From positions 62,001 through 126,000 of IMG/VR virus record IMGVR_UViG_3300047095_000752: a stretch of DNA of 64,000 nt; one strand, 5' to 3'. Made by a program: the position numbers and the translations under genes. The notes under the pieces are model-generated. The model ran no database searches, was not told the origin of the DNA, and worked only from the letters and a program-made list of their open reading frames with translations. Positions 907 to 59,324 of the stretch are shown piece by piece. The first letter of the stretch is position 1. Each line of letters starts with the position of its first letter.

Positions 907-1009
907 AATAATTCCAACAATAAAAATATAGGTTTCATATTATAACAACTATAGACCTTTAAGTAAAGTTGACCCCATCTTTGTAAAAAAGATGAATGAG
1001 ACTTAAGGT

Positions 1010-1029
1010 CAATAATTAATATATATAAT
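1010..1029 (-). promoter_or_regulatory. AT-rich repeated motif (putative phage early promoter)
   Basis: + strand CAATAATTAATATATATAAT, one of 9 near-identical copies upstream of minus-strand genes. Confidence 0.55.
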
Positions 1030-15423: not shown

Positions 15424-15547
15424 AATCCTCTTTACTGTTAAAAAATATATAACAAAAAAATCGTAACTTCAATTAATGAATGACTTTATGATATATGAAG
15501 ATCGCATATACTTTAATCTGGGATAAAAATAAACCAGAGTATATACT

Positions 15548-15567
15548 CAATACTTAATATATATAAT
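15548..15567 (-). promoter_or_regulatory. AT-rich repeated motif (putative early promoter)
   Basis: CAATACTTAATATATATAAT. Confidence 0.5.
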
Positions 15568-19215: not shown

Positions 19216-21349
19216 TTATTTCATTTTTAGAAAATAAGGATTTTTTAAATTTGTGGAATAACGCTTAATGTTTGGTGTGTACATATACAGTTGGATGTTA
19301 ACATGAGACCCATCTCTCGGATATAACGCAAGAGCCACATTAAATGAACTTACATAGAAATTAATGTTACACATCCCATATTGGGCGATACTATTTATCA
19401 ATTGTGTTATCCTATGTCCGATTTTAGCATATCCTTTGAACATATCATACATCGAAGTTCACCATCGGTTTGTCATCCTTATAGGTCTTTTATAATATGC
19501 CGGTCCTATCGACTTGATCATTGGAGTATATACATAGAGATGCCAATGTATTAGCTTCCGACCATCCAGTCGGGGTGAGTGTAATATATCAACGCCTACA
19601 CTTGTCAGTGTATAAAAGTGAACACGTAATAACTCAAATCCAAGTATACTATCTATAAACATTTTTAATTTTTCTGTCACGGTTTGAATATTTTTATAGG
19701 TCATAACCCCATAGTCCCTAATAACATCGGTCGTTTATATGTATCGCCGGACATCCTATTACTGGCGGCATAAGCATAAATGTGAAATTTATAGCTATAT
19801 CCATTCGTTACCGAGAAAAAACCAATCCCAACATTACCGGTCGCACCATAAAAATTTATAGACCATATCTCGTGTCCTGTTATTTTTTCCATGAATTTAC
19901 TTAACATATGCGCGACTCTTCTAATAACATTAATGGGCATATTTAATCATCCTTATCATTTCTTTATTGGATTTTTTTGGTAAAGTTCCATGATTACTTA
20001 TGTACTTGTATATATTTAAATGTATTTGATCTGATGTTACATAAGCGCCGTGTTTAAAAATACGAACCCCTACATTTTTAGTTATAGGAAAGTAAATGAT
20101 GTCATAAAATCCAATTCCAAGAATCTTATTTATAAAGCGGATGAGCCGCCTCGCTATTTTTATAGTGAAACTACTCATGAATAGGCACCTTTCCATTGAA
20201 TGCATACGTCAGTACCCATGCCGCGTCGGATTATTTCGCATTTGTTCTTTATAAGACATCCCAAACGTATGAGCTTCAAGATGGAGCCAGCACGAAAACA
20301 TTCCTATATGTTCGTACATTATTATCCTTGACGTTGTATTATTTAGTACTATATAGTTTTTATTGTTAGGTTGTTCAAAGGATTTTATATGGGTTCTGAT
20401 GTCATATATAAGGGCGCTTGATACCGATTTATTTATTGCGTTTAAAAATTTTTCAATCCAATATGATGAATCGTAGATCCATTCGTCCATTTGTGTTTTA
20501 TGTGAAAGCATACTAATCTTTTTTTATTAATTTTTTTGATATTAAAATATACTTGGTTGATAGCGGTCGGACGCTATTATGACGAGATCGCATTTGTTCT
20601 CCTACGCTTACTTTACCATTCCTCATGTAAACTCCTTTTAAAGTTAATAAATAATATGGTGCATACAACAGAATATATGTAAGCTTTTTGAATTTCTTTT
20701 GGATAAATAAATTACATAGTGTGATTCTGTATATCTTAAAAAGTGATTTGTTAAGGTGGTGTGTATATAAAAATCTAAATTAAAATTACTAACTACGTGA
20801 AATACCTTATTTATAAACTTTGCGATAATATATAGGGTGTGCCCAGTATACTCTTCAAAATAAGGTGCTATATTTATCATTTGTAATAGCTTATTTTATG
20901 ATGTAAAAATGAAATGCATAAAAATCCGTATCTATTATTATTCATTATTTTAAAGTTAGATTGGTGCAGAGCTATATTATTTGTTGGTATTCCAACGTGG
21001 ACCATATATCTTATAAGTGATGTGTGTTGAGCCGTGATAGTATTTACAAAGAGTCGCAGTATATTTGATAAATTACCTACAATTGTCACATATGCTTTTC
21101 GCATTTGATTGAAATTCATTATATTGTATACCTTATTTTAAACACAGTAAAGTAAACTTGTAATAGATGATGAGTTCTTAAATTTAATACTGAGAGTACA
21201 GATGGGATGGAGTAGTTCTCAATTGCTAAAACAACTATGTGATGAATATCGGGGCGTGATATATTTAATGCATTTATAAGCAATCTAATAGTGGAGCCTA
21301 CATTAAGACATGTCAGTTTAATGCAAGTATTATAGTGGTTACTAATCAT
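19216..21349 (-). CDS. Tandem array of 8 short paralogous hypothetical ORFs (76-100 aa)
   Basis: ORFs at 19216, 19459, 19701, 19930, 20209, 20644, 20877, 21119; overlapping stop/start codons; shared helix (L/I)xxFI(N/D)xI. Confidence 0.6.
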
Positions 21350-21515
21350 TTCTGTATACTTTATAAAAATCTATGATTACATCCAATGCTAAGCTAGCAA
21401 TTATACCTACTATTGCAGATTCTATAAAATTCATATTCCATATTTGATCTGTTACAATTATACATGTGAGGACGAATAAAAAATACGATACAGTACGTAA
21501 CCAAGGTCGATTCAT
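21342..21515 (-). CDS. Small membrane protein (57 aa, not in ORF track)
   Basis: MNRPWLRTVSYFLFVLTCIIV...AIVGIIASLALDVII; ATGA overlap and GGAGG RBS. Confidence 0.6.
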   Translation of the reverse strand: MNRPWLRTVSYFLFVLTCIIVTDQIWNMNFIESAIVGIIASLALDVIIDFYKVYRND

Positions 21516-21919
21516 TTACCCTCCAGTTCTTCTTTAAGTTTATTGAATAGTTTTTGTTTTTCAGTTTTTGTTAAATTTAATGCATCTATTTTATTTTGTC
21601 TTCTAGTTCTTTCTATAGCTCTTTTATATTCTTTTTCCTTTTTAATTCGTTCGTTAAATTCATTTTCTGTTTCATATCTATACAATACAAATTTTTCATC
21701 AAAACTGTCATAATAAGATTCCGATCTTTCAAGTTGCATTGAATAGTAGTCTCTATACTCAGGGTCGATAAGGTCTTCGAATTTCTTTTCGGCTTCGTCT
21801 AGACTTTTACGTATCTCTTCAAATGTCACATCGTAAAATCCACTATCTAAATTTATCGAATGAACTTTTTTATACTTTCTACTTATATTGTATTGAGTGT
21901 ATGTATCTTGCTTTGGCAT
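21512..21919 (-). CDS. Hypothetical protein, YRYETxxE family
   Basis: FVLYRYETENEFNER shared with 21879-22292 and 50239-50691. Confidence 0.7.
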   Translation of the reverse strand: MPKQDTYTQYNISRKYKKVHSINLDSGFYDVTFEEIRKSLDEAEKKFEDLIDPEYRDYYSMQLERSESYYDSFDEKFVLYRYETENEFNERIKKEKEYKRAIERTRRQNKIDALNLTKTEKQKLFNKLKEELEGK

Positions 21920-22292
21920 TGTATTTAATCCTCCTTCGTTGTCTTTTTACTCTTTTATTATAACAATTAAACATTCTGTGAATAAATTCTCCACGAGTCT
22001 CGTATCTATAAAGGACGACCATAAATGTCGACCCATGGGATGCGTTGATAAAATAATTCGAGTACTCATATTTATGTGGTGCCAACCTTGATAATAAACG
22101 ATTAAGTATATTTCCAATAAACATAGGTATTTCATTTGTGGAGACCATCCAAATATCAGCTACACCAATAAACTCAGATGTATGATATTTATCTCGTCTA
22201 TTTGAATTATAAAACGCTTCAATGTTATCTATATTATTTTCGTCTATTTTTGTATATTGATTCTCATCATCTATGCTTTTTAAATACATCAT
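21879..22292 (-). CDS. Hypothetical protein, YRYETxxE family
   Basis: VVLYRYETRGEFIHR. Confidence 0.65.
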   Translation of the reverse strand: MMYLKSIDDENQYTKIDENNIDNIEAFYNSNRRDKYHTSEFIGVADIWMVSTNEIPMFIGNILNRLLSRLAPHKYEYSNYFINASHGSTFMVVLYRYETRGEFIHRMFNCYNKRVKRQRRRIKYNAKARYIHSIQYK

Positions 22293-22790: not shown

Positions 22791-22822
22791 TTTGACCTCC
22801 GTTTTTGGTTAAAGGATATATA

Positions 22823-22879
22823 CAATAATAAATATATATAATAAAAAAATAACCCCGCAGCCTGTAGTGGCAGCGGGGT
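22823..22879 (-). promoter_or_regulatory. Terminator hairpin fused to AT-rich promoter-like motif
   Basis: CCCCGC stem (22843-22879) abutting CAATAATAAATATATATAAT (22823-22842). Confidence 0.6.
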
Positions 22880-28894: not shown

Positions 28895-30135
28895 TCACTT
28901 CAAAGACAATAAATACGAACTGTTTATTATTTTAATTACAGTCAGTTCCAAGAAACATATGTACATAATCCACATTATTATAGATGATGTGTAGTTAATA
29001 CATCTCCATATGCGAGAATAATATTTACTATTGGTGCCTGATGTGTATATAGGTGGTCTTATATAGTATTCACTGAAGGTCCCACGATGGGTCAAGGTTA
29101 TAGATTTGTAATTAAATCCAGATCCCGGAAACATATGATTTATCGGTCTAAATGCAACCTCAACGACATTATATAGTTTCATTAAAAGTTATTCCGCGTA
29201 AAGTTGAATGTGCTAGGCTTAGATATCATATATTCGGAATTTGGTATTATTATACTATTATTTGGAAAAATTAAATATAATATTTCTAATGCCATTATAA
29301 TTATTGGACTCAGGCAACGTCGTATAAACATGGCAAACTGATGGTTAGAAGTTACTGACAATAAAAATGTTTCCATAATTTGATATCTAGTCCACTCACA
29401 TAGTTGTATTCTATATACTTTACAGTCTTTAGTATGTATAGTAAATCTTAATTTCATGAATGTAAATGGTTTACGCTCAGGTTTATTATCCCATGTATAC
29501 ATAATGACTCGATTTTGGAATTAATACTGAGAAGCCAGCGTAATCAAATTGGGAAAACCCTTTGGTGCGGCGACTAACTAAATTTAGCAAAAGTCCAAAT
29601 ACGTGCTCACTCGATACAAATATAATATCGGAAAACCATTTACCATGGTTATATATAAATGGACTTGCAAATAAAGTCTCTACAATCTTGTAACTGTGGA
29701 ATCTAGGTCTCATGTCAAACAAAGAATATAAATGATATCCGGGATGTGTTCTACTTTTAAATATAGAATATTGAAGTCGGATACAAGTAAATTTGAATTT
29801 CATACAATCCAGTTGTGGTTACGGTCATCGTTTGAAGCCGTTCTGTATATATGCATAAAACTCACCGTTAGGAATGGTTTCATTTTTCTGTCAATAAAAA
29901 ACAATATATCCAATATTAATAATAGAGTTGAACTTAAAGATGATATTAGATACATTATACATACTCTATTTGGTACTGGTACATTTCCATACTCGGGCGG
30001 AAATAATAAAACCATACTAACGGTATTAAAATGAGTTGGATTCGGATATGGAGCAAATGTAACTGAGTTATATAATTTTCTAGGATCTTTACGATACCCC
30101 GTGTATGTGAATCGATTGAACGGACCTTTAATCAT
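28895..30135 (-). CDS. Tandem array of 4 short paralogous hypothetical ORFs (95-111 aa)
   Basis: ORFs at 28895, 29182, 29486, 29800; coupled; beta-rich N-half and hydrophobic C-terminal helix. Confidence 0.55.
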
Positions 30136-34746: not shown

Positions 34747-36031
34747 TCAATTCAAACGGCGGTTCGGCATCATATAATATCTAACATATGTATGATATAC
34801 CTTCATGAATGCAATTAAAATACTACTCGAATCTAGAACTGCTGATTCGTCCCCCAATCTTGATGAATAAAAGAAATTATAGTTCATATAACCAATCGAA
34901 CATAGGTCTTCGAAATAATAAACAACTACACGTGATATAACACGTCCGCTTCTTGCACTATCTGGTAACCCTTCCCATATTAAATCCAAAAATTTACACA
35001 ATGATTTACTGATCTGACCTATCAACACGTCCAATTCATTGAGTTTAAACATATCACGCAGGACCCCAGTATTTATCTAATGGTAAACATAATGCTTTAT
35101 ACGGTGTAATGAATAACATCATAACATTATCTCTAAGTTCTGAGAGCTGATGGGATACGGAATAATATTTCGCTTTAGGTTTATGTGCATATGTTAATCT
35201 CCGTGTATCTGATAAGTAATCATGTGCGATAATTTCTTTATTAATTTTATATGTAGATCTAATAACTCCAACCAATAGCTTTTGAAGTTTCTGTATTGAG
35301 AGGTAATAATAGTTGTTTATAGGGTGATTATAACTCATTTGGACCTGTCGTATAATAGTTCTTTCGCTTTGTCTAATATTTTTCCGCGAATCCAACTGTT
35401 ATTGGAGGTTCCCGATCCGAATAAATCGACTCCTACTAAGAAATTTGCTAGGTCGGAAGAATTTCGATTCACATAATCATTCACAAATATAACTCTATTT
35501 ACACCATTGATTTGTTTGTTGTATGTTCTTATATACCCATCCTCTATTTTGACTACAATGTCCTGATCTGATACGTTATATCCAAACACTTCGGATTTAT
35601 TTTCGGTTATGTACTTTCTGGTTTCACCATTTAGATATATCGATGTAGTCAAGTCATCTAAGTGTTTTTTATAATCTAATGGTGACATTTCGTTTTCTTG
35701 AATTTTAATAGAATCTAAAGCGACTAACGACTCTATGTATTTGGGGTCTACTGGTATATTGGTCACTGTGTTATCCCCTGTAGTAAGGTTCTTTCGAAAG
35801 TTGAAATATGAATAATTTAGAACATACATAATTTAATACAGATTCCGTCCTATAGTATGAATTTATATGTTTTGGAAATGATTTTTTATAACTTACAAAC
35901 CGGAGTGTCTTCCTATCATATTCGTGTGGTATTTTATCCGGATGTAATCTAACTAATACAGAACTAATCTCATGTATGTATATTCTCAAGTCCAGCATAA
36001 TATCGCAGATTTTATTTAATAAATCACGCAC
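34747..36031 (-). CDS. Cluster of 4 short hypothetical ORFs
   Basis: ORFs at 34747, 35054, 35335, 35771; three resemble the helix-first array proteins. Confidence 0.5.
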
Positions 36032-36708: not shown

Positions 36709-37194
36709 TTAATAATCCCTGTAGTCGCGTGTGTCGTATATTATATGCCATTCTAATTGCTTTGCTATATAATCATAAAAATTCGATTCCATAAGATATA
36801 TAAAATCCCGAATTGCTTCTGTATTTTCTGAAGTCTTTAAACTTTGGATACTGGTATTATTATCATCGTCAAACAAATGGACTGCAACGCCCTCATCGGA
36901 TGGGTATATGAATCCGACATCTTCCCCGTTTATTTTACAGATTTCCATGGTAAATGGATAGTATACATGTAAATACCTAAATAGCCTTTCATAATTTTCT
37001 TCTTCATATAAATTTACCAATTCTATATTGTCTATATTAAATATTTCCAATTTTGAATTTTTATCGGGTACTCTGTTATGTATCATATATAATGAAAATC
37101 TACGCAACTCGTCTATCGTTTTAAATCTATATGCGTAAAGCATGTATATATTAACGTCTACTGTAGATGTCGTGGTTATTAACACTGTTTTCAA
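36709..37194 (-). CDS. Hypothetical protein
   Basis: Weak similarity to 5325-5828 and 7729-8268. Confidence 0.6.
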   Translation of the reverse strand: MKTVLITTTSTVDVNIYMLYAYRFKTIDELRRFSLYMIHNRVPDKNSKLEIFNIDNIELVNLYEEENYERLFRYLHVYYPFTMEICKINGEDVGFIYPSDEGVAVHLFDDDNNTSIQSLKTSENTEAIRDFIYLMESNFYDYIAKQLEWHIIYDTRDYRDY

Positions 37195-37834
37195 CTCCTT
37201 GTGTGGTAAATGGTTAACCTAATATCCGGGAACCCTAAGCTTATACCAATCTCTCGTTGGTGGAATATAAGTATGCTGGGTGGCACTCGTTTATTAATCA
37301 ATCGAGTATATGATGTCTTGTAGTCCAGTCTGATTATCATACCATACTTTACTATGTGTGAACTTTGTATTTGGTCCGGTGGTACGGTTATAACTGGTTT
37401 TATTATATGTACTTTTTTAGAATTTATTATAGTGCATATAAATACTGTATACATAAAACTTATTATATTTAATATTGTATTGTTAATTTTCATATTAGCG
37501 ACATCTTGAATGTTATCTCATAGCTTCCGGATTTCTTTTTTATTGTTAAGTATTTAGTTAATATTCGATTCTGTTGCTGAGATCTATGTACATACCCAAG
37601 TCCTATCCCACTAACCCATCCTATTTTATAAGGGACTTCAAATTGAGCTATACCCCAAGTTGCTTTCTGGATGGTGGAATGATCTACTTTAAACATATGT
37701 ATATCGAATTTTTTATTAATCTTTAACAGCAATAACTTTAAATGCATTATTTGAAACAAGATTACATGTTTTGCACCAAGGCTCGGTGATAGACATCCTC
37801 CTCTCCCAACGAGTCGGATTGAAAACATCTTCAT
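37191..37834 (-). CDS. Two short hypothetical ORFs (37191-37493, 37490-37834)
   Basis: ATGA-coupled; composition like the array proteins. Confidence 0.5.
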
Positions 37835-38627: not shown

Positions 38628-38702
38628 CGTGGGTGTACTCCCAGTATTTTTGTTAAAGTTGATGGTTAATTCAATAATTGATATATATAATGTTACCCTC
38701 AC

Positions 38703-40560: not shown

Positions 40561-41827
40561 TTAGTTATAATATGAATACACTATGCTAAAATTGTACAAC
40601 TTGTAGAAGTATATACGAACTTCATATGAGGTGTGGCAATCCATTTTATTTTTTGAAAACATCATTAATTCGGCGCTGTGCATCCATACATTATCTCCAA
40701 AATGTGTGAAGATATATTTATCATGCAAAATCATATCTATTAAACAGTTTACTTTATAAAACATTCTTGATGTTAGGCTTAAGGTCGGCGTTGTAAATAC
40801 CATTTACATCGACCTTTTAACTAGATAATAATCTATAGGAAATGGACTCCCCATAGAATCGAAAGTCTCATTCGCATCAAAAGCGACAAGTATATATCGT
40901 TTGATTTCAATATCAGTAATATCTACTAAAATTTTGGGGTGATAATTTTTAAATACAAATCTATATGTAACTTTAGGTTCTCCGTATTCGATATTATATC
41001 CATACAAATAATGTGAAGGTAGCATCAATATTTTATTTATATTTATTTTACTCAATAGATTAATACAAGAACCAATCAAACTTCTTAACTCATGATTGTC
41101 GTAGTCGTCAGGTAGTAGTGTAATCATCAAAAAGATCCTATCACATTATACACCACGGCTTCATTAATATCATTTTTCCTCCAAAGTAATGTGATTAAAT
41201 AATCGTTCACCGAGAATTGACCAATCTTCTTTATGTATACAGCTTTACTTTCATCAAATGCAAATTTCACTGTATAATACGTGTATTTATTATTAGTTTT
41301 ATAATTTTTGAACATGTACACAGGAAGTATAAGAATTGGTTTATTGTTGTGTGTGAACCCAGCCGCTGTAGTTAAACATAAATTTATAATACGATATAGC
41401 CTCCCAACAACTCCATTTAAATGAAATCCTGTAATAGAGTAAGTCTCCGACATTAGAAACTACTGTTTACCGAGTAGACTATATTAGGCGAAGTATAGTA
41501 TGTACCAATACAATACATAAAAATATAGTTTTTAAGGTTTAGATCGGATTTACGTAGAGTTATATCTTTTCTTTTTTTATCACCATTCTTATGTCGGATT
41601 GAAATTGACTTAAACCAGTATATCTTAAATTCTTCCGTAAATAGATAAGTTGGGAATATTATGTTGACCTTGCGTCCCGTCGAGTTATACATATAACATC
41701 TATGTAACAGATAAAATACTTCTCCTATTACAAAATTTATATCATTCGTAAAATTGTTAATGTACTTCAATGGTCCACTCCTTTTTGTGTGTCTTCTATT
41801 ACTCCACATTATCCAGCGAGCCTTCAA
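40561..41827 (-). CDS. Tandem array of 4 short paralogous hypothetical ORFs
   Basis: ORFs at 40561, 40804, 41127, 41453; shared helix then I(L/I)xPxY(L/M)(F/Y). Confidence 0.6.
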
Positions 41828-41943
41828 TTACATCTTCTATCGTCAAGTCGTTAGAAAATGCAATAAAAATAAATAGAATAGCAGCTTGCACTTTAGTCAT
41901 TTTCTAACTCTTTTGATGCAAAAAAGAAAACTTGTATTATATA

Positions 41944-41997
41944 CAATATTAAATATATATAATAAAAACTAGCACAACTCCGATGGTTGTGCTAGTT
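41944..41997 (-). promoter_or_regulatory. Terminator + AT-rich promoter-like motif
   Basis: AACTAGCACAAC/GTTGTGCTAGTT stem abutting CAATATTAAATATATATAAT. Confidence 0.65.
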
Positions 41998-49337: not shown

Positions 49338-50180
49338 TTATTGAATCGAATCCAACAAGTTTCGAGACTCTATGAGTTGGGATTGGGTTACAAATGGAGC
49401 ACGTGGTGGATCGGTGACATCATCGGATACAGTGACATCCGGAAAATCATATACGCTATCGGATGTATTCATAGCGGCAATTTGATTTGAAAGTGAAGTG
49501 AACGACTCCAGTATATTTTTATATCGTGCGTTTTCTGCATTTCTCAGTTTATTCAAATTGGCTTCAATTGTTTTAATATTCGTTTCAAGTGTCGCAAATT
49601 TCTGATCCATATCATTTTTAAATTCATTGAATTTTTCAATCATTACAATTTCAACATTATCTGCAATCTCGGATGTTCTGTATTGAATTTCATTTTTAAT
49701 ATCGGTCGACTGCTTTTCGATGGTTTCTTCGAATGTGGATTTAACGTCCGAACCAATTCTCGTTAGAGATACTTCCCGGTGAGTATTCTTATATGTATCC
49801 TGTAGATTTTGGGTCTGTTCGCCCAATATTTCTCTCAACATACTCGAAATATTATTATACAATTTATTATGGGCTGTGGTTTTATTTGGACTTCCTTTGG
49901 GGCGTCCGGTACGTTTTTGTTCGCGGCGCACTTTGCCCCACAATTCCAGATCAGACTTGAGGTTCAAAAGAGCGGGACAATCTTGAAAGTTATTCCAGTT
50001 ATATGTGTACGGATAATCATTTTCTACAAGTATATTTTGTATAGATCTCATTTTATCTCGGCAGGTTGGGTCCGAATGATTATACAAAAACCCCCGGATG
50101 GTGTATATCGAATAGCCGGAGTGGTTAGCAATGAACTGTACAATGCAGGTGGTTTGATCTGTTTTTGGGTTAGTGGGCAT
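49338..50180 (-). CDS. AT-hook and coiled-coil protein
   Basis: KRTGRPKGS, heptad-rich C-terminal half. Confidence 0.65.
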   Translation of the reverse strand: MPTNPKTDQTTCIVQFIANHSGYSIYTIRGFLYNHSDPTCRDKMRSIQNILVENDYPYTYNWNNFQDCPALLNLKSDLELWGKVRREQKRTGRPKGSPNKTTAHNKLYNNISSMLREILGEQTQNLQDTYKNTHREVSLTRIGSDVKSTFEETIEKQSTDIKNEIQYRTSEIADNVEIVMIEKFNEFKNDMDQKFATLETNIKTIEANLNKLRNAENARYKNILESFTSLSNQIAAMNTSDSVYDFPDVTVSDDVTDPPRAPFVTQSQLIESRNLLDSIQ

Positions 50181-50238
50181 TTTTAAACCTTTTCATGTTA
50201 AGTTGGGGGGTGAGTGTACTTACAGTGGTCTGTTAAAC

Positions 50239-50691
50239 TTAAACGGTTGAGGTATGCCCCGACTCCACCGGAATTTTACAATTGGCATTTATTGTCTTAA
50301 TCAATTCCATCCGAGATTTCATGGGTAGACTATTTACGGCTTTATATACCCGATCTATCTGTTCTTGCTCATGTTGTTCCCGGCGGCGAATCTGGTCCTT
50401 TATGTTAAAATCCATCGTGTCACATCTATTGTTGTATTCTTCTTCGGTCTCATATCTATAATTTACAATCTCATATCCGCCACATTTATAGTCATCACCA
50501 AATTGATATTTAACAACTTGTTTAACCCATTTTGGATTGTGGTTGTTATCAAGCAATTCTATAATTTTATTTTTAGCGTCATCCAAAAGTAATCCGTCAA
50601 GGTCATCAATCATAGAGTCTAGCTCAATTATCGATGATCTTTTCAAAAGCTTCTTGGATTCGTAATCTCTGGCTGTGAGTTCTACTTTCAT
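50239..50691 (-). CDS. Hypothetical protein, YRYETxxE family
   Basis: IVNYRYETEEEYNNR. Confidence 0.65.
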   Translation of the reverse strand: MKVELTARDYESKKLLKRSSIIELDSMIDDLDGLLLDDAKNKIIELLDNNHNPKWVKQVVKYQFGDDYKCGGYEIVNYRYETEEEYNNRCDTMDFNIKDQIRRREQHEQEQIDRVYKAVNSLPMKSRMELIKTINANCKIPVESGHTSTV

Positions 50692-50692
50692 T

Positions 50693-53600
50693 TTAATTCC
50701 TTTGTAGGTTCAGGTGCTTTGAAATCGTTAATCTAAATGCTGGGATATAAGACGGATTTAGATTACGAAGGTCGGCGATTTCCGTCTGGATTTTTATATA
50801 ATGCTCGTTGCCGTCATCCCCATATAAAGTGTATTTATAATAAAACGGGGAATTGAAAAATCTTTTCATATGAGTTGTTACTGGTAAATCTCTTAAGTAA
50901 ACCCTATAATATTGGGTTATTATCTTTGGTTTTATAACATATAATAGTTCATATACTTTAAACATGGAATCTGTAAATAATTTTATAATTTTAGAATACT
51001 TTTTAATATCGGAAGAAGTCATCATACAATTTTGGACTCGATGCTGTGAATTTTATCTCTGATGTTGTATATGCACGTGCGCCCCACGAGAAAAACTTAG
51101 AATGTACTACCCATATATTTGCTATTCCAATTACCTTCTGTAACATGGTTGACGAATATGTTATTGATCGATTTATAGATTGGCTTGTATTTAAGAAATA
51201 ATCATTCTTGATATAAACTCTATTGTATTGTATGAATATTCCTGCTTTCTTCCCTATCACGTGTATAATAGATTGCGCCCGACATAATAATTCATTGTAT
51301 ACCCGTAGTGGAAGTTTATGGAGCATCATTCTTCATCATCTCCATAATCATCGAATTCGTCGATTTCATCGTATTGTGCCGCAACCCCATTATAATATTT
51401 TGTTTTATTATATGAATCTTGATAGTCCATGAAAAATGCCTTAAATAACTGACTAAATTCATCCGTGTATCCATGTTCACCTCGTCCGCCGGTATAATTG
51501 AAAAACATTATAAACACAAATGAACTATACCCCAATCCAAATATATTTATCGTTTGAGACTTTTCCCGTAAAAAATCAAATATTTTATTCACATCATTGT
51601 ATAATACAGAGTGTACAGACGTATTTATATAAGATCCTAGACTACAGGTTCGACTTAATATGAACTGGAAAACATCCATCAGAAATCCTATACGCACACA
51701 AAGTTCGTACATAGGACTACACCTACCCTCGTCATTACAACACGCGACGATATACGTTTCATGCAATGAGGCGTGTGGATCTGGATAGTACTCGCTTTTT
51801 AGTAAATTCTTGATATAATCTCTAAAACAAAATCCATCGAGAGTTGTCTGGTGCCTTCCGTTGAGTTGCACTATCATTCGGGTACGCTCCAAGTCTTTCG
51901 GGTCAACGTAGTGTCCTTAGTGTAGATAATCTCGTAATGTAACTCCAAAGTGTTATACGACTGATCATCATATGAACCCTTCAACCGTAGTATATTCAAT
52001 TTATTATACGCTGCAAATAAATAATCGTGATCTCCATGCGGGGGTTCTTCCTTAACTTGGCATATCGTATAGGGGGTTGAATTTAAATCTATAGTTAGAC
52101 CCACATCTTTATTTTTTATAGGAGATTTGTTGTATGTTGGAGCCATATAATACATATAAGTCGGTAGGGCTATATATTTCAACTTAGGTGTACAGCGGTA
52201 TAATAAATAGAAAAGCCCCGTTATAAGTTTTTCTATTTTGAGTGCAAATTGTTTACACATCATTTGATAGCTTCGGATGCGAATGTAATTTGACTAAATT
52301 TTGTATGGACAGTTTTATCAAATTTGTTGGGAGAACCACTATATTTGAATATACTAAATAATGTAAGTTTGAAGTTAGATATATTCATAATTTGAGTGCC
52401 AGACCATGCTATATCACTCGATATAAAATTTGTATTAACAATCAACTTATAGTCATCCAAGCCCGAATCTAATGTAAAGTCATAATACGATCTATTATTA
52501 TGTAAGGAGGGCTGCAAAGTTCTATACATATACCCTGATATCGCTATTATGTCGACGTTAAGTTCTCGTAATAAACTCAAAATTTCACATATCGAATTCT
52601 CTAACTTTAGTATCATGCTTTACCTTTCGGTCTAGTTGTGTGTAACTGGGTATACGATAAAGATATATCACCACCGTCATCCTCGGCGGATACTAATTTA
52701 AATATAGTCAGTCTACATTTGTTTATATAAATATTTTCAAACCTTGATTTTTGACCATGATTAATTTTTGGTATGTATTCAAATCTAGTCATTATATATC
52801 GTATACTATCATTTATATTGAATGATACGTGGAATTCGTTATAATTGTCTGGTGTTGATGTGTATGATGGACTCATATAATACAAAAATGAATGAAAGCA
52901 TATACACTCCATCGGTCTTTTAATGCTTAACATTCTGAATATGGTCACTATACAATTCTCGATTAATTCTGGTATATGATTCATTTGTATTTAATAAGGA
53001 TAGGGTTGATCATACAGTCAAATGCTTTTTGGTCTAATACAAATAACTTGGGGGGTTCACTATCCGGTCCAACCTCGAATATCGGGCATTTTACGCATGA
53101 CATGTGATAAATAATATTTGATGTACCCTCGATTCTTTTGTAAAAGTCCACTTCATCATTTGTGTTGAATACGTAATCTATAAGGTCCCAATAGAGCGAC
53201 GGATCCCCAGTTCTATACAGGTAGTTTGGAATATGTATATATTTAGGTTTAAATTTTAATATTAAATTTAATATTTTACAAATCGAAACTTCAACGTAAT
53301 GAATAGGGTCAGTCGTTGCCATTGTTAAATCCTTTTTTAAGAGTTGGAATATCAACCGAATCAAAAATGTATATTGGGTATGGTGAATGTGAGAATTTAT
53401 TTAAATTGAATTTAAATAATGTATTTTTACCAGTACTCCTATATACTTCGTTGAGGTCATTGGGTTTCATGTTGTACATTTTTCTGGGTGGGTTATCAAC
53501 TCCGAATCCACTGGAGTCTATATAGTAGTTCGTAGTTCGCCTCCATATATAACAAGGTGTAAATAACACGAAGGGTCGTACACCAGAACTTCCTAATTTC

Positions 53601-55727
53601 GATTTAACTATTAATATAAGGGTAGATGATATTGCAGATTCTATCATGTCGATGAAATCCATAGTTAACATCTATAACCTCCTGTCGGTAAGATTTGATG
53701 TTATTCGGATATCAGCGTAACCCTTCTTTATATTTACATAATATAAATTGTTGGCATTTGATAGCCCATTAAAATAAATCAGTTTTAGATTATCTACTAT
53801 ATAGTTTTTTGGTCTAGGTGGGCTATAAATGAGTATGTCACCAACACCATCGATACGATATGGTTCAAACATTAAGGTATTGACTATAAAATGAACATGC
53901 CGATCATGTACACTTGATGCGGCTGGTGCATATGCTACTAAATTTAAGTACAAAAGTGAATTCCTAATATCATATAAATTAAAAATAGTTTTTATTATTG
54001 TCATTACCGCTGGTATGGATGCTGATATATAATTTCTGGTGCTACTCATGGCATTCTCTATAATCGTATATTTCGATTCCGCGCCCCATAAATGAAATTG
54101 AGAATAAAGTTGGCTTGTGAATAAATGCTACCGCTAAGTCGACCTTTGTGTCAAAGTCGAATCCTAACGTCATAGTGGTTGAGGCATACGGTTTATATCT
54201 GTATATATCGGGAGTTAAGCTAACTTCAACATACCCTAAAAAACTTTTACAACAATCATGGACGGCGTATCTATACATAGAATCGCAGTATATGTCAGTA
54301 ACCTTTCTACTCTGCACTAAATATGACATCAAATGACTACATAATGTTATAACGAATTTACGTTTAAATATTTTACATAATATACACAGAACACTACACA
54401 CACTATATTCTATTTTTCGAACTAACACGAGATTCAATTCAATATCCTTTCGTGGTTTTACTCTCTTGTTAAAATATATATAGTGAGTGTTTTAATATAC
54501 ACTGAGTGTTAGATGTAACCTGTCGGTCAAGGGTGAACCACTGTATTCATAGTCCAAATGTAATATATCCGACTTGTGAATATTAAATACATTTATTTCA
54601 TTATTGACGTTAGTTGTATATGTTTTGTATGACTTTATTTGGTCATATACTTTAAGTGAAATTAACGGCTCTCTGTATAATGTCATATAATTATCAAAAC
54701 CGTCCAGATCAGTTTGCGAAGAAAAGAATACTAAATTCTGAGACTTCATATCGATTGAACATATATCTTTTGGCTTACATATAATATGATAAAAAAGAAC
54801 AAAAGATTTGGATATTGAGTTTTCAATTTTAGCATATAAGTCCCGTATAAAATCTTCAGCCATACGCATATTGTTACCTCCCTTAAGTTCGATTACAAAA
54901 ATAAATATCATAAGGTATGATATCAATAATTAATATATATAATTAAAAATCACTTACCAAAATTAATGGTAAGTGATTTAATGTAGGACTTTTAACTTAT
55001 ATTAGAATGCTGTATATTCCTCGATGGGTATTATGTCGAAGTGAGCGCTACGAGGAAATGATAACCCTATTATATGCCTTTTGTGTATACATGTTTTGAA
55101 ATCGGGAGTTTGGCATGGGTAGTAATTAAAATCTTTCAGAAAAATTGTCAAACCTTCGAATAAAGGGGTGTCATCAGACCATCTAACTTTTTGTATATAT
55201 CTCGGATACAAAACCGAATAATGACCATCTAAAATTAATGGGTTGTATGTGAATATGTATATTATTTCACCAATTGGATCTAGGATACGACGTAATAATT
55301 TAAAAAGTATAGGTACACATTTTAAATACAGGTCGCTTATCAATTGCTTCAGTCTCCGGTTTGTTAACATCTAAAATGCGTTATAATCACAAAGTTTTAT
55401 CATTTCAAATGACGTGTCATCCACCCTTTTTATTCCTATTAAATTCTTCTTACGGACCAGCATTCTATAGTCTTCTCGACCCGTTTCGTAATCGTTAAAA
55501 TCTTGAGCCGAAAATGTCGTATAATAATTTGTATATAATTCTAGACCCCACAGTACCTTATCTTTATGTTTCGGGTATACAATTGAGGTATGGCAATATA
55601 TAGTAATAGGGTTTGTAACAAATATGTATGTGACTTTATTTATGGGTTGTATAATATTTCTAATTAAATGAAATAATAATTCTATTTTATGTGCTATTTG
55701 AGTGTATTTGTCAAAGTCTTCGTTCAT
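50693..55727 (-). CDS. Tandem array of ~12 short paralogous hypothetical ORFs (108-144 aa) plus one unrelated ORF (51326-51892)
   Basis: ORFs at 50693, 51003, 51874, 52260, 52613, 52981, 53309, 53672, 54042, 54492, 55002, 55371; KIExxIxxI(L/F)xxL...I..PxYxY pattern; coupled stops/starts. Confidence 0.65.
54924..54979 (-). promoter_or_regulatory. Terminator + AT-rich promoter-like motif
   Basis: AAATCACTTACCA/TGGTAAGTGATTT stem abutting CAATAATTAATATATATAAT. Confidence 0.65.
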
Positions 55728-55766
55728 TTGATTTCCTGAAGTTTAAGATTAAACCATTCTATGAAT

Positions 55767-57323
55767 TTATTTCTTCTTTTCTTTTAATTTTTCTATACTC
55801 AACTCACTGAGGGGTTCGCCGAATAATACTTTTTCGATCTGTGAATATTTCTTCGAGTCTTTTGAGATCAACCCAAATGTTAAACTTTTACCAAGGTTCT
55901 CATAGGCGACCCCCAGAGACCACGATATAATCGAAGGAAGAGATTTAATGCTATGTAATTCCGGATCGTATGGATCCTTCAATCTGGCTGCAATCATCGG
56001 ATCTTTCTTATTTCTTAAAATCGTTGCGAGGATGACCTCAAGGTGGCAACTATCCCAAGGTCCAAAAGTACTTAGAGCTTCGTAAAACTTCTTGTATAGG
56101 TTCTCTGGGGTCTCCCATGGACCCTTGCCCGCAACCAATGAGTCTAGGCTCTGGGCGATCTTTTCAGGAGCGATCTTAAAGAATTTAATTGTAAATAATT
56201 TAACATCTTTACCATACATTAAAGTGATACTATCAGCAGTTTCATTATAATCATCGTGGATATTAATTTCAACAGGCATTTCAATAGTAGCATTAACTTC
56301 AATATTACCAATATACATTCTAAAATAGCCTAAAGGTAACTTATAAGTATTTCCTACTTTTTCAATTGCATACTCGTCCTTGAAGATACTTTTATTGATC
56401 TTAATCGTTGTTACTTCAGCGCTGGAGTATAGATCGTTATCTTTTTGATATACCATACCTGATAAATATTTTTCTTCGTCATCTGTAATAGAGTCCGCAA
56501 GTTCTTTTAAGATATCCACCTTCTTGAAGACTACGGCCCCGCCTGTGTGAAATGAATTGTGTGTCTGAACATTATTATTCAAAAATTCTTCGGAGTCAGT
56601 TTTAAGATCATATACATATCCACAATATCCCTCTATACCGGGAACTACCTGCTCAATATCAATGTAATCATTAATATCCTGTATAAGCTTATCTGAAGGC
56701 ACAGCATTCTTTAAAGTCCAATATACAAGTCCGTCTTCAGTATTAATATCAAAGTTACAAGTATGACTTAAATGATCTGCTACAAGCTTCAACTGTGATA
56801 CAAAGTTAAAACTAAAAATCTTAGACTTGGTGTTGACTTTATCGTCGGACTTAATATTATCAAATAAGAAATGATATAAAAGGTATGTTAAGTTACTAGT
56901 ACTTATTTTAGATAAATAATCAGGATTAATACAAAAATTATATATCGAATCGCCATTAAAATATTCGGAATGATTTGCAATTATATGTAAATTAGGATCT
57001 TCAAATATATTCAACAAAATGTCAAATAGTATATCTACATCAGGCGGCTCTACCCCGTAAACAAATTCTAATTTACGTTCGGTGTTATCAACCCAAATTC
57101 TATCATGGAACATTACTATATCTTTAGCTTCAACCACCGTAGGTTGCCCGTCAAGCGACTGAATCCATACAGGGTGGTCTTCTTGGCAAAACAGCATATG
57201 TCCAGTCACAGTGCGAATAAAGCACATTGGTGCCGTTGGTGTATGCCTTTGGATCTTATATGCTCGGGTTAAACCGTCTTTACCCACGACATTGAGATCT
57301 AACTCTTTAGTTTCTAAATTCAT
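55767..57323 (-). CDS. rpoC: Split-intein C-part (256 aa) fused to RNA polymerase beta' C-terminal fragment
   Basis: CQEDHPVW (block B), VYDL (block F), QTHN|SFHTGG (block G + trigger loop), HLEVILATI, AYEN. Confidence 0.9.
   Translation of the reverse strand: MNLETKELDLNVVGKDGLTRAYKIQRHTPTAPMCFIRTVTGHMLFCQEDHPVWIQSLDGQPTVVEAKDIVMFHDRIWVDNTERKLEFVYGVEPPDVDILFDILLNIFEDPNLHIIANHSEYFNGDSIYNFCINPDYLSKISTSNLTYLLYHFLFDNIKSDDKVNTKSKIFSFNFVSQLKLVADHLSHTCNFDINTEDGLVYWTLKNAVPSDKLIQDINDYIDIEQVVPGIEGYCGYVYDLKTDSEEFLNNNVQTHNSFHTGGAVVFKKVDILKELADSITDDEEKYLSGMVYQKDNDLYSSAEVTTIKINKSIFKDEYAIEKVGNTYKLPLGYFRMYIGNIEVNATIEMPVEINIHDDYNETADSITLMYGKDVKLFTIKFFKIAPEKIAQSLDSLVAGKGPWETPENLYKKFYEALSTFGPWDSCHLEVILATILRNKKDPMIAARLKDPYDPELHSIKSLPSIISWSLGVAYENLGKSLTFGLISKDSKKYSQIEKVLFGEPLSELSIEKLKEKKK
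56556..57323 (-). mobile_element. IntC half of atypically split intein with degenerate endonuclease-like insert
   Basis: Residues 1-256; ends His-Asn followed by Ser+1. Confidence 0.88.
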
Positions 57324-57605: not shown

Positions 57606-59324
57606 TTAAGCAACTTTCTTCTTAAATACATTATTTCCACAATCCCAAACACGATCATATTCATTACTTTGCATATTTTGCCACTCGGTTAATGTTGGAT
57701 CAAATGATTCTAATAGATTGTTTAATTTATGTTTTTGAAATTTAAGTCTGGAATCTCGATTCATATAATCATTGGTATAAAAGTAATTTGGTGAGCCTGT
57801 ATGCGTTAATTCAAATCCAGAGCTTTCATATATATTACCATATCCATATCTTAGATCTGAATAGGTTATTATATCACACTTGATATCTTTTGAGAAGTCA
57901 TTTACTAACTTTTGGAAACCACCGACTACATTTGTATTTAATTTTGTGCAGAATCTTAATATTTCGTAATTGTCTTTGGATCTAATTACTGTAATCATGC
58001 TAATTAAATTATTATTACTATCATAAAGTCCATAATTGAATCCACGATGAGTGTAACCTTGTATATGATTTTGGTCTAAAAATAACTCTGCGTCCTTGAA
58101 GGGAACCTTATGTATATTTAGATCCGATGTATTATATGTATTTTCATATATTTTTAATTTATTTGCAATAATCGAACAAACTATATCTTGCTTATTAAAC
58201 CATTCATCATCGAATATATGAATTAAATCAATTCCTTTTTCTTTACATAAATTCGTTTTATTGATATGGTAATGTTCATCTTTGCCTTGTTTTTCGGAGT
58301 GCCAATAGAGTCCGTTGAATTCAATTGCAAGTTTGTAGTCTGGAATGTAAATGTCGATTTCAAGTGGATTTATTAATGACCGGTCATTTTCTATTATAAT
58401 TGTATTTTCTGGTAGGATCGATTTAACGAATTCGTAAACTTCGTGCTCGCCTTTGGAAGTGCCTGACATACCCTGATGTGGGTAACAATTAAAACATCTT
58501 GGTATGTGTCCATCCGCTAAATTATCTAAAAAGATATGATTACAAGTATTACATTTGAATTCATATCGGTTATCTCGTGATATTCCATTATATTCATCTA
58601 GGCTAAATACTGGCGTTACTTTACTTAATAATCTTTTTGAATTCAACAATTTTATATAAAATACTTCTTTTAATTTAACTTTACCAGCGGCAGACGATAT
58701 ATAGTGTTTATGACCATATCGTTTAACCATTGTGTTTTCGGCTTTGTTTCTTATCTCTTTTATTTTAGATACGTTATCCACACCGTATTTTTCTTGTACT
58801 GTATTTTTAATCTTTTCACGAATTTCATTAGATTCGAATGGAGTTAGTGCTCCATATTTTTCTAAATTAGTTTTATTTCGTTTTTCGTTTATTTCTTTAT
58901 TGTCAAACAGATTTACACTACCATATCGCTCAATTCGTGTATTAAGTATTTTATTCTTAACTTTTTCATTTTTTGCCGATTGTTCATACCCATACTTTTT
59001 TAGATTTGTGTTTTTTATTTTTTGTTTTACATCTTCATTTTGAAACCCATATTCAGATCCATATCTCTCCAGATTTGTTTGTTTAATTTTGTTTTTAGTT
59101 TCTGTATTTAATCCCCTGCATTTATTAGAGCATGTTTTATAAAATCCATCTTTAAAACTTTTATATGGGGTTGGGCTTTTACAAACTTTACACAAATGTT
59201 CGTCATTAACTGAAATATATTTAATATAATATTCTGATATATGTATTTCTTTGTGTGAATGCATTATATGATTTTTTAAAGAATTTGTATCATCAAACAC
59301 TCTCTGGCAGATCTGACATTGCAT
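57606..59324 (-). CDS. Free-standing putative homing endonuclease (Zn finger, TNLERYG repeats, Vsr-like/Hef-like nuclease)
   Basis: CQIC..H..H; TNL(E/K)(R/K)YG repeats; EIDIYIPDYKLAIEFNGLYWH; LIHIFDDEW; NHIQG, RFC, YSDLRYG. Confidence 0.85.
   Translation of the reverse strand: MQCQICQRVFDDTNSLKNHIMHSHKEIHISEYYIKYISVNDEHLCKVCKSPTPYKSFKDGFYKTCSNKCRGLNTETKNKIKQTNLERYGSEYGFQNEDVKQKIKNTNLKKYGYEQSAKNEKVKNKILNTRIERYGSVNLFDNKEINEKRNKTNLEKYGALTPFESNEIREKIKNTVQEKYGVDNVSKIKEIRNKAENTMVKRYGHKHYISSAAGKVKLKEVFYIKLLNSKRLLSKVTPVFSLDEYNGISRDNRYEFKCNTCNHIFLDNLADGHIPRCFNCYPHQGMSGTSKGEHEVYEFVKSILPENTIIIENDRSLINPLEIDIYIPDYKLAIEFNGLYWHSEKQGKDEHYHINKTNLCKEKGIDLIHIFDDEWFNKQDIVCSIIANKLKIYENTYNTSDLNIHKVPFKDAELFLDQNHIQGYTHRGFNYGLYDSNNNLISMITVIRSKDNYEILRFCTKLNTNVVGGFQKLVNDFSKDIKCDIITYSDLRYGYGNIYESSGFELTHTGSPNYFYTNDYMNRDSRLKFQKHKLNNLLESFDPTLTEWQNMQSNEYDRVWDCGNNVFKKKVA

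What the first reader, a model, noticed from the sequence alone, without database searches (positions are those of the whole stretch)
50693..55727. Largest tandem array (~12) of hyperdivergent small paralogs
Seen: consecutive 108-144 aa ORFs, many with ATGA overlaps, share only an N-terminal amphipathic helix and following strand: KIEKLITGLFYLL..YIALPTYMY, KLENSICEILSLL..IIAISGYMY, LIENCIVTIFRML..ICFHSFLY, YVEVSICKILNLI..YIHIPNYLY, MIESAISSTLILI..LFTPCYIW, KIEYSVCSVLCIL, KIENSISKSFVLF. No DNA-level repeat is visible, and composition is rich in Y/I/F/H/C. Inference: a gene-accordion family with a constant docking helix and variable beta-rich part, such as interchangeable specificity adaptors or anti-defence proteins.
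Basis: partly seen in the sequence, partly recalled or inferred. Interest (0 to 1): 0.72.

Follow-up and report, generated by a model that had tools for sequence, protein, structure and literature searches.

The report
Fast-evolving small-protein family, lake jumbo phage
A row of small genes in an uncultured lake-water giant phage is a real, very diverged protein family (seven or eight sure members, not twelve) that changes far faster than its neighbours. It probably encodes early-made accessory proteins for dealing with the host, but no function has been tested.

Summary
The window is part of a 245-kb jumbo phage from lake-water metagenomes that carries two multisubunit RNA polymerase sets. 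Fourteen tightly packed minus-strand genes (g1-g14, 50239-55727) follow the split beta' genes.

Sequence and profile comparisons show one diverged family. Membership is firm for g3, g4 and g6-g10, suggestive for g1, g2 and g5, and absent for g11-g14. Three more members lie in a second array at 40804-41827. Members share an N-terminal helix-strand module (..IE.sI....L.., then I.IP.Y) and a later K-L-T-L-F strand.

AlphaFold gives one helix plus seven strands for g9 (pLDDT 68). No known fold or family matches it.

Four related contigs carry the same collinear array. Flanking RNA polymerase genes are 91-97% identical. The array core (g5-g11) is only 33-42% identical and has no detectable DNA similarity. 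dN/dS stays below 1, and adjacent genes differ strongly in dS, which indicates recombination mosaics.

g3 onward starts at a terminator plus an invariant AT-rich motif. The motif occurs 29 times in the genome and resembles the AR9 early (virion polymerase) promoter.

My best reading is early-expressed, fast-evolving host-interaction proteins. An active "gene accordion" is not supported, and a docking role for the helix is untested.

The parts
55371..55727 (-). g1, 118 aa; recent paralog of g2; suggestive family member
   Evidence: g1~g2 E 4e-21. hhalign of the g1/g2 group against the enlarged family profile gives P 0.004 over 34 N-terminal columns. 75-80% identical to orthologs in L009 and L014.
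55002..55370 (-). g2, 122 aa; paralog of g1
   Evidence: L012 has a single g1/g2-type gene.
54947..54979 (-). Terminator-like hairpin (13-bp stem plus T run) between g2 and g3
   Evidence: The stem is conserved in L009, L014 and L012 while the loop varies.
54915..54944 (-). Invariant AT-rich block (core TATATATATTAATTATTGA at 54923-54941); predicted phage early-type promoter for g3 onward
   Evidence: Nearly invariant across five lineages. Five copies in the window against 0.07 expected. 29 copies in the genome, 25 on the minus strand. Resembles the AR9 early promoter AAATATATATTAT-(6N)-G (PMC5312081).
54492..54869 (-). g3, 125 aa from the ATG behind AAGGGAGG; family member
   Evidence: Start and RBS. 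hhalign against the g7-g10 profile gives P 1.9e-5 over 94 columns. Ranked 1 of about 800 ORFs in the leave-one-group-out test.
54042..54437 (-). g4, 131 aa; family member
   Evidence: hhalign against the enlarged profile gives P 8e-4 over 55 columns. AF2 pLDDT 51.8, uninformative.
53672..54049 (-). g5, 125 aa; suggestive member (lacks the helix Glu)
   Evidence: hhalign P 0.0095 over 21 N-terminal columns. The leave-one-group-out test failed. Orthologs are 31-38% identical.
53309..53671 (-). g6, 120 aa; family member
   Evidence: hhalign P 6e-4 over 79 columns.
52981..53322 (-). g7, 113 aa; core subfamily with g9
   Evidence: phmmer against g9 gives E 1e-7. Present in the representative library as P0103.
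52613..52984 (-). g8, 123 aa; core subfamily with g10
   Evidence: phmmer against g10 gives E 5e-5. The g7/g9 HMM hits g8 at E 0.004 and g10 at E 9e-4 as its best non-self hits in the genome.
52260..52616 (-). g9, 118 aa; folded member
   Evidence: AF2 with an 18-row alignment: pLDDT 68.5, pTM 0.58, helix 2-18 followed by seven strands.
51874..52263 (-). g10, 129 aa; core subfamily with g8
51326..51877 (-). g11, 183 aa, acidic (pI 4.6); in the same operon but not a family member
   Evidence: hhalign P >= 0.2. Orthologs are 42-51% identical. Composition.
51003..51329 (-). g12, 108 aa; not shown to be a member
   Evidence: hhalign P >= 0.22. 74.5% identical to the L009 ortholog.
50693..51025 (-). 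g13, 110 aa; not shown to be a member (control-level score)
   Evidence: hhalign P 0.035, then 0.12 with the enlarged profile.
50239..50691 (-). g14, 150 aa; a different family, with a paralog at 21512-21919 and a weaker match at 21879-22292
   Evidence: The g14 HMM hits 21512-21919 at E 4e-5 and 21879-22292 at E 0.036.
40804..41827 (-). Second array of three members (40804-41130, 41127-41453, 41453-41827) with the same N-terminal module
   Evidence: hhalign against the g7-g10 profile gives P 9e-5 over 37 columns. The N-terminal HMM hits 40804-41130 at E 6.8e-4 as the first non-self hit. No BLAST similarity to the syntenic L012 genes, although the flanks are 41-57% identical.
41943..41961 (-). 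Promoter-motif copy (3 mismatches) behind a hairpin and T run, directly upstream of the second array

Best explanation
g3-g10, probably with g1-g2 and three genes at 40.8-41.8 kb, are real protein-coding genes of one lineage-specific family. Each encodes a ~115-130-aa alpha+beta protein.

The family arose by old tandem duplications, including a two-gene unit g7g8 -> g9g10. It has since diverged under weak purifying selection, and alleles are shuffled by recombination between co-circulating phage lineages.

g3 onward is transcribed as the promoter-proximal part of an operon. That operon starts at a conserved terminator/promoter cassette of the phage's own AT-rich promoter class, which I infer to be the early class read by the virion RNA polymerase.

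I infer that the proteins are non-essential early accessory factors acting at the phage-host or phage-phage interface, such as host takeover, defence evasion or exclusion. In this reading the conserved N-terminal helix-strand module and the K-L-T-L-F strand hold the fold together, and the variable remainder carries target specificity.

Shown: the genes are coding, they are paralogs, the island is hypervariable and mosaic, and the regulatory cassette is conserved. Inferred: the early timing and the host-interaction role.
For: Coding:
- Collinear orthologs of matching length exist in four other contigs even where DNA similarity is gone.
- dN/dS is 0.2-0.6 over longer distances.
- Shine-Dalgarno-like sites or ATGA coupling precede most starts.

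Family:
- Searches support it; the consensus is.

Lineage-specific ORFans:
- Only 11 hits were found among 1.84 billion representative proteins, four of which are the window's own genes (g7-g10); of the seven external hits, five were traced to related contigs with collinear arrays and two (P0110, P0111) were not traced.
- Pfam, PHROGs and PDB sequence searches gave nothing.
- No fold match: Foldseek E > 0.05 and best VIA Z 4.2.
- Relatives with 65-70% beta' identity lack the family.

Hypervariability:
- Flanking genes have dN 0.004-0.17. The core has dN 0.58-0.75.
- Amino-acid identity falls from 75% (g1) to 33% (g5, g8, g9) and rises again to 71% (g12).

Recombination:
- Between L009 and L011, dS is 0.19 for g8 but 0.78-1.23 for g9 and g10, and g7 is saturated.
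- L009 and L014 are 98-100% identical across the array, with divergent patches at g1, at the end of g5 and in the 280-aa gene.

Regulation:
- define the cassette. One search gives the AR9 early promoter for comparison.
- The genome holds two beta' sets, as in AR9 and phiKZ-type phages.
- The second array also sits directly behind such a motif.

Context:
- The array lies in the replication/transcription module, not among recognisable virion genes.
Against: - No expression data exist. No RNA run was listed, so both timing and translation are inferred.
- No gene shows dN/dS above 1. The recent L009-L014 comparison gives pN/pS 0.99 from only 25 changes, which fits relaxed constraint as well as conflict.
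- dS in the core is saturated, so rate estimates are rough.
- No partner, target or defence system is identified, and the host is unknown.
- The strand and temporal partition of the genome could not be confirmed. Plus-strand blocks also hold replication genes.
- The g9 model has only moderate confidence and the g4 model is poor, so a shared fold across the family is not demonstrated.
Confidence: 0.4

Rival explanations
1. Dispensable ORFan genes that drift under relaxed constraint. The island diverges fast simply because little depends on the sequences, with no arms race and no specific targets.
For: The pooled recent pN/pS is 0.99 (20 nonsynonymous against 5 synonymous changes). Gene-wide dN/dS is never above 1. 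The family is absent from relatives at 65-70% beta' identity.
Against: All members keep intact frames, lengths, order and the two motifs across five lineages despite saturated dS. dN/dS is 0.2-0.6 at intermediate distance. The regulatory cassette in front of them is invariant. Duplicates have been retained for a long time.
Confidence: 0.25
2. The conserved N-terminal helix docks all paralogs onto one conserved phage hub, for example the adjacent multisubunit RNA polymerase. The variable beta part then supplies interchangeable specificity.
For: The N-terminal 40 residues are the most conserved part among both paralogs and orthologs. The array abuts the beta' genes, whose products are 91-97% conserved. 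Weak, non-significant structural echoes of Rpb7/RpoE' subunits recur.
Against: In the model the helix is part of a single compact domain (pTM 0.58), so its conservation may simply reflect the hydrophobic core. The promoter motif is invariant while the proteins vary, which argues against promoter-specificity factors. The second array is not next to polymerase genes. All fold matches are below noise.
Confidence: 0.1
3. Virion-internal or ejected proteins (the paralogous inner-body or internal-protein type), packaged and delivered with the DNA.
For: Tandem, very diverged paralog families of packaged proteins are known in phiKZ-like phages (from my own knowledge; not checked here).
Against: The array lies in the replication/transcription module. 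It sits behind an early-type rather than a late-type motif. The proteins are small and have no detectable relation to such families.
Confidence: 0.08
4. Degenerate enzymes or enzyme-derived binders of the nucleotidyltransferase or ADP-ribosyltransferase fold.
For: Language-model neighbours of g9 include DUF2204, AbiEii and ANT(2'') clusters at scores of 0.91-0.93. The best VIA matches are ADP-ribosyltransferase domains at Z 4.2.
Against: The lead does not recur for g3 (best 0.69, unnamed cluster) or g10 (best 0.42). Z 4.2 is under the tool's stated background of 7-8. No G-S / D-x-D or R-S-E motif is conserved in the alignments. There are no Pfam hits.
Confidence: 0.03
5. Chance ORFs that are not translated.
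For: No RNA or protein data exist.
Against: Amino-acid similarity and ORF architecture are conserved where the DNA is unalignable. dN/dS is below 1. RBS sites or ATGA coupling are present. The strand is fully packed, with no alternative genes.
Confidence: 0.02

Closest known systems
Early-gene operons of phiKZ/AR9-type jumbo phages, read by the virion RNA polymerase from extended AT-rich promoters (AR9: AAATATATATTAT-(6N)-G; PMC5312081)
   Same: The phage has two multisubunit polymerase sets. It has a highly conserved, many-copy, extended AT-rich motif with a conserved G a few bases downstream, often just after a terminator hairpin. Small ORFan genes come first in the unit.
   Different: No sequence relation to any AR9 or phiKZ protein, and beta' identity is 27% or less. 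The start site and timing are unmapped. The motif is longer and not identical.
Poxvirus-type gene accordion (transient tandem amplification of one gene under selection)
   Same: Tandem paralogs in a large DNA virus, and a conflict-driven rationale.
   Different: Accordions are recent, near-identical DNA copies with rapidly changing copy number. Here the paralogs are 33% identical or less with no DNA repeat. Copy number is nearly fixed at 12-14. The allele is identical across samples.
Hyperplastic or accessory early regions of large virulent phages (T4-type plasticity regions, the SPO1 host-takeover module) and anti-defence gene islands
   Same: A block of small, co-directional, tightly coupled genes between conserved core genes. 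Divergence and mosaicism between close relatives are extreme. The proteins are ORFans.
   Different: Those regions mostly hold unrelated genes, whereas here at least seven genes are one family. No associated regulator or known anti-defence family was found. This comparison rests on general knowledge, not on a test.
Lineage-specific expansions in jumbo phages (for example the ~35-copy zinc-ribbon expansion in Bacillus phage G; PMC7824862)
   Same: A phage-lineage-restricted multi-copy family of small proteins.
   Different: The domain is different and unknown, there are fewer copies, and the members are arranged in two tandem arrays.

Membership tests
Single paralogous family covering the ~12 ORFs | Significant sequence or profile similarity of every ORF to the others | tested here: inconclusive
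   Met for g3, g4 and g6-g10 (P 1e-7 to 8e-4). Suggestive for g1, g2 and g5 (P 0.004-0.01). Not met for g11-g14 (P >= 0.12 with the enlarged profile). Reversed controls gave P >= 0.039.
Single paralogous family covering the ~12 ORFs | The same predicted fold in different members | tested here: inconclusive
   g9 is modelled as helix 2-18 plus seven strands (pLDDT 68.5). g4 is modelled as an N-terminal helix, a second helix and six strands, but at pLDDT 51.8. No model-to-model comparison was possible.
Gene accordion | Near-identical tandem DNA copies | tested here: not met
   No direct repeat longer than 26 nt. The best paralog pair is 32% identical at the amino-acid level.
Gene accordion | Copy number that varies between very close relatives or within populations | tested here: not met
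   L009, L014 and the window hold the same 14 genes. L012 lacks one g1/g2 copy and one g7g8 unit. Contigs of four other runs match with 0 differences.
Diversity-generating (templated) hypervariation | A template/variable repeat pair near the variable genes | tested here: not met
   No repeats in 50200-55800. Variation spans whole genes and includes synonymous sites. A reverse transcriptase was not searched for genome-wide.
AR9/phiKZ-type early (virion polymerase) promoter | An extended, highly conserved AT-rich element present in many co-directional copies upstream of genes | tested here: met
   29 copies, 25 on the minus strand. Five copies in the window against 0.07 expected. Invariant across five lineages. 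Compared with the published AR9 consensus.
AR9/phiKZ-type early (virion polymerase) promoter | Transcription starts about 6 nt downstream, early, and independently of new protein synthesis | not testable with these tools
   No RNA run was listed.
Anti-defence (anti-CRISPR-like) locus | Membership in a known anti-defence family, or an associated HTH regulator | tested here: not met
   No Pfam or PHROG hit for any array gene or its immediate neighbours. Activity is not testable here.
Minimal nucleotidyltransferase fold (DUF2204 / AbiEii / ANT(2'')) | A family-model match and conserved G-S and D-x-D catalytic motifs | tested here: not met
   No Pfam hit. The motifs are absent from the alignment. 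The language-model lead was not reproduced for g3 or g10.
ADP-ribosyltransferase fold | A structural match above background and an R-S-E or H-Y-E triad | tested here: not met
   Best Z 4.2, under the stated background of 7-8. Arg of Y-R-T is replaced by Tyr, Phe or His in the g8/g10 subfamily, and no ExE is present.

The most novel reading that the evidence does not exclude
The family is a modular adaptor system. A conserved N-terminal helix-strand module plugs every paralog into one conserved phage machine, most plausibly the neighbouring multisubunit RNA polymerase or another early hub. The hypervariable beta domain of each paralog recognises a different host factor or defence protein. Recombination between co-circulating lake phages reshuffles the set like cassettes. 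The fold would be new.
Probability: 0.1. Interest if true: 0.75.

Novelty: new member of a known kind. Interest (0 to 1): 0.42.

Why it matters
Hypervariable islands of small early genes are where large phages are thought to keep their host-takeover and counter-defence tools, and most of these genes are unreadable ORFans. This island is unusually tractable for four reasons:
- At least seven genes are one family with two recognisable motifs.
- Five natural allelic versions are already available from lake metagenomes.
- The flanks are nearly identical, so whole-array swaps are conceivable.
- A sharply defined promoter class marks the unit.

If a function is found, it would name a new protein family, and possibly a new fold, for freshwater jumbo phages. 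If none is found, the array is a clean example of how fast dispensable phage genes diverge and recombine.

Tried and rejected
- Megablast and tblastn against GenBank phages found no close relative.
- Pfam, PHROGs and PDB sequence searches of members and of the family profile gave nothing.
- Within-genome iteration and leave-one-out HMMs built from window sequences alone were too weak. They became informative only after orthologs were added.
- The search for related loci with the 518-aa protein picked intein peptides and failed. With the C-extein alignment it found only relatives at 27% identity.
- A hand-made regular expression for the I-P-x-Y strand was too strict. It gave 3 hits against 4.6 in shuffles and was dropped.
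- Fold searches in PDB, AFDB clusters, BFVD, the ESM Atlas and VIA-wide gave no match above background.
- The nucleotidyltransferase lead from the Atlas was not reproducible.
- AF2 of g4 with a g3-g6 alignment gave pLDDT 51.8 and is unusable.
- The g9+g10 co-fold gave no answer.
- I tried to use strand blocks as a proxy for early and late genes. It failed because the plus-strand blocks hold replication genes.
- Two literature searches for similar arrays returned nothing specific.
Full report
**What the window is.**
- The window is bases 62001-126000 of a 245,225-bp IMG/VR virus record estimated at 78% complete.
- It has about 33% G+C, no tRNA genes, and nearly all its genes on the minus strand.
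- The neighbourhood is a replication/transcription module. It holds SbcCD, a helicase, topoisomerase II, SSB, DNA methyltransferases, HNH endonucleases, an RNA polymerase beta subunit and a beta' gene split into three pieces.
- A second beta' gene lies elsewhere in the genome. The phage therefore has two multisubunit polymerase sets, like phiKZ- and AR9-type jumbo phages. No tubulin was found.
- No GenBank phage is close; beta' identity is 27% or less.
- At least 24 lake-water metagenome runs hold the array region.

**The observation.**
- Between 50239 and 55727 there are 14 consecutive minus-strand ORFs, which I call g1 to g14.
- After choosing starts with Shine-Dalgarno-like sites, they are 108-131 aa, except g11 (183 aa) and g14 (150 aa).
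- Five junctions are ATGA overlaps.
- There are no DNA repeats.
- Tyr, Ile and aromatics are enriched. Cys and His are barely enriched.

**Are they paralogs? Window sequences alone.**
- Only three pairs are significant: g1~g2, g7~g9 and g8~g10.
- Iteration and leave-one-out profiles add little.

**Are they paralogs? With orthologs added.**
- Homologs of the neighbouring beta' gene and an exhaustive profile search led to four further contigs with the same collinear array. These are L003/L009, L011, L012/L013 and L014.
- With these orthologs, the g7/g9 and g8/g10 subfamilies join. Their HMMs find each other as the best non-self hits among 814 genome ORFs, at E 9e-4 to 0.012.
- Profile-profile comparison against that four-gene family gives g3 P 1.9e-5 over 94 columns, g6 P 6e-4 over 79 columns, and a second array at 40804-41827 P 9e-5.
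- After adding these groups to the profile, g4 reaches P 8e-4, g1/g2 P 0.004 and g5 P 0.0095.
- g11-g14 and unrelated small-protein groups stay at P 0.12 or higher, and reversed alignments at P 0.039 or higher.
- A leave-one-group-out HMM test on the first 55 residues agrees. g3, g7, g10 and 40804-41130 rank first among about 800 ORFs, g4 and g6 rank 4th and 8th, and g1, g2, g5 and g12 fail.
- The family consensus is ..IE.sI.klf.Ll..i...k.I.iP.Yiyrtsp.y ... KltlFn ... i.f..I.
- The family is therefore firm for seven genes, suggestive for three and absent for four. It also extends to a second locus.

**Structure.**
- AlphaFold2 on g9 with 18 family sequences gives pLDDT 68.5 and pTM 0.58. The model has a helix at 2-18, which is its most confident part, followed by seven strands.
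- Nothing matches it. Foldseek against PDB, AFDB clusters and BFVD gives E above 0.05 and TM below 0.4. The ESM Atlas gives TM 0.51 or less against unrelated families. VIA-wide gives a best Z of 4.2, below that tool's stated background of 7-8.
- Scattered ADP-ribosyltransferase, OB-fold and Rpb7-like rows are at noise level.
- A nucleotidyltransferase lead from language-model neighbours of g9 did not recur for g3 or g10, and no catalytic motif is conserved.
- g4, folded with an independent g3-g6 alignment, reached only pLDDT 51.8. Common fold across the family is therefore untested.
- A g9+g10 co-fold, motivated by the duplicated two-gene unit, returned no answer.

**Evolution between lineages.**
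- Between the window and L003/L009, flanking polymerase genes are 96-99% identical in protein, with dN 0.004-0.02 and dS 0.3-1.6.
- Identity then falls along the array from 75% (g1) through 59%, 52% and 45% to 33-42% for g5-g11. It jumps back to about 71% at g12-g13.
- DNA similarity disappears between 54318 and 51275.
- Core dN is 0.58-0.75, at least 30 times that of the polymerase genes. dS there is saturated.
- Against local dS, omega is 0.3-0.6. Against the median flank dS of about 0.7, it would be near 1. No gene shows omega above 1.
- Between the nearly identical L009 and L014, pooled pN/pS is 0.99 from 25 changes.

**Recombination, copy number and stability.**
- Adjacent genes differ several-fold in dS within one genome pair. 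Between L009 and L011, g8 has dS 0.19 while g9-g10 have 0.78-1.23.
- L009 and L014 are 98-100% identical, except for patches at g1 and the end of g5 and a sharply different 280-aa gene. This is the signature of recombination mosaics, not of local hypermutation.
- The window's own allele is letter-perfect in contigs of four other lake runs.
- Copy number differs only in L012. It has one g1/g2-type gene and one g7g8-type unit, plus two unrelated small genes where g4 lies.
- The tree separates the two subfamilies with full support, and its branches are long. The duplications are therefore old.
- Relatives with 65-70% beta' identity carry unrelated genes at this position.
- The exhaustive search of 1.84 billion representatives found only 11 hits, all traced ones from this clade.

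**Regulation.**
- The 132-bp g2-g3 spacer holds a 13-bp-stem terminator hairpin. A 30-nt AT-rich block follows, nearly invariant in all five lineages even where the coding DNA is unalignable.
- Its core, TATATATATTAATTATTGA, occurs five times in the window against 0.07 expected, all on the minus strand.
- It occurs 29 times in the genome, 25 of them on the minus strand. Copies often follow a hairpin and T run and lie 40-70 nt before a ribosome-binding site. One copy precedes the second array.
- It resembles the experimentally defined AR9 early promoter AAATATATATTAT-(6N)-G, which is read by the virion polymerase. That paper states that such extended AT-rich elements are typical of phiKZ-related phages (PMC5312081).
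- I therefore infer that g3 onward forms the promoter-proximal part of an early operon. g1 and g2 belong to the preceding unit.
- No RNA data were available to test this.

**Interpretation.**
- The genes are real, old tandem paralogs of a lineage-specific family without a known fold.
- They sit in a hypervariable, recombining island behind a conserved phage promoter.
- This is the usual genomic signature of early accessory proteins that meet the host, through takeover, counter-defence or exclusion. I commit to that reading at about 0.4.
- The main rival is drift of dispensable genes under weak constraint.
An active gene accordion is not supported.
- The finding is a new family within a familiar kind of phage genome feature.

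Noticed in passing
window 55767-57323 (-): The 518-aa beta' C-terminal piece carries an intein-like insertion, roughly from Cys34 to His-Asn256 and followed by Ser257. Relatives' versions carry weak Pfam Intein_splicing hits. The L009 version is 694 aa, so the insert size varies. More distant relatives have an unsplit beta' of about 720 aa.
   Followed up: partly
window 57606-59324 (-): A 572-aa homing endonuclease (phrog_3339, E 1.6e-121; DUF7487 plus C2H2 zinc finger) sits between the beta' pieces. It is only 48-55% identical between relatives whose beta' is 91-97% identical.
   Followed up: partly
genome-wide; window 1009-1027, 15547-15565, 22822-22840, 38671-38689, 41943-41961, 54923-54941: A class of 29 copies of TATATATATTAA(T/A)TATTG(A/T), 25 of them on the minus strand, often directly after a terminator hairpin. 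It is a candidate early-promoter regulon of this phage.
   Followed up: partly
L009:12554-14761 and L012:12331-14532: Relatives carry a 733-735-aa gene with weak Cas12b/TnpB-type RuvC and WED hits just downstream of the array. The window's genome has no tblastn match to it. At that position it has a 164-aa ORF and an 811-aa protein with an NPPY motif, which looks like an N6-adenine methyltransferase.
   Followed up: partly
window 49338-50180 (-): The 280-aa coiled-coil-like gene after g14 is 88% identical to L014 but 71% to L009. L009 and L014 are about 99% identical across the array, so a sharp recombination breakpoint lies at the g14/280-aa boundary.
   Followed up: partly
window 21512-22292 (-): g14 has a paralog at 21512-21919 (E 4e-5) and a weaker match at 21879-22292 (E 0.036). 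Both lie behind another copy of the promoter motif at 22822-22840.
   Followed up: no
window 19459-21119, 28895-30135, 34747-36031, 37191-37834 (-): There are further runs of 80-115-aa ORFs. Several have an N-terminal amphipathic helix followed by a hydrophobic strand. The ORFs at 34747-35052 and 29800-30135 recur just under significance in the N-terminal HMM tests. They may be more distant members.
   Followed up: no
L009:4729-5673: L003/L009 has an extra 314-aa gene (faint CapR hit) between the beta' C piece and g1. It is absent from the window.
   Followed up: no
window 51326-51877 (-): g11 is acidic (pI 4.6, net charge -13), ends in a DEIDEFDDYGDDEE tail, and is better conserved in its C-terminal half. 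It is unrelated to the family but always embedded in the array.
   Followed up: no
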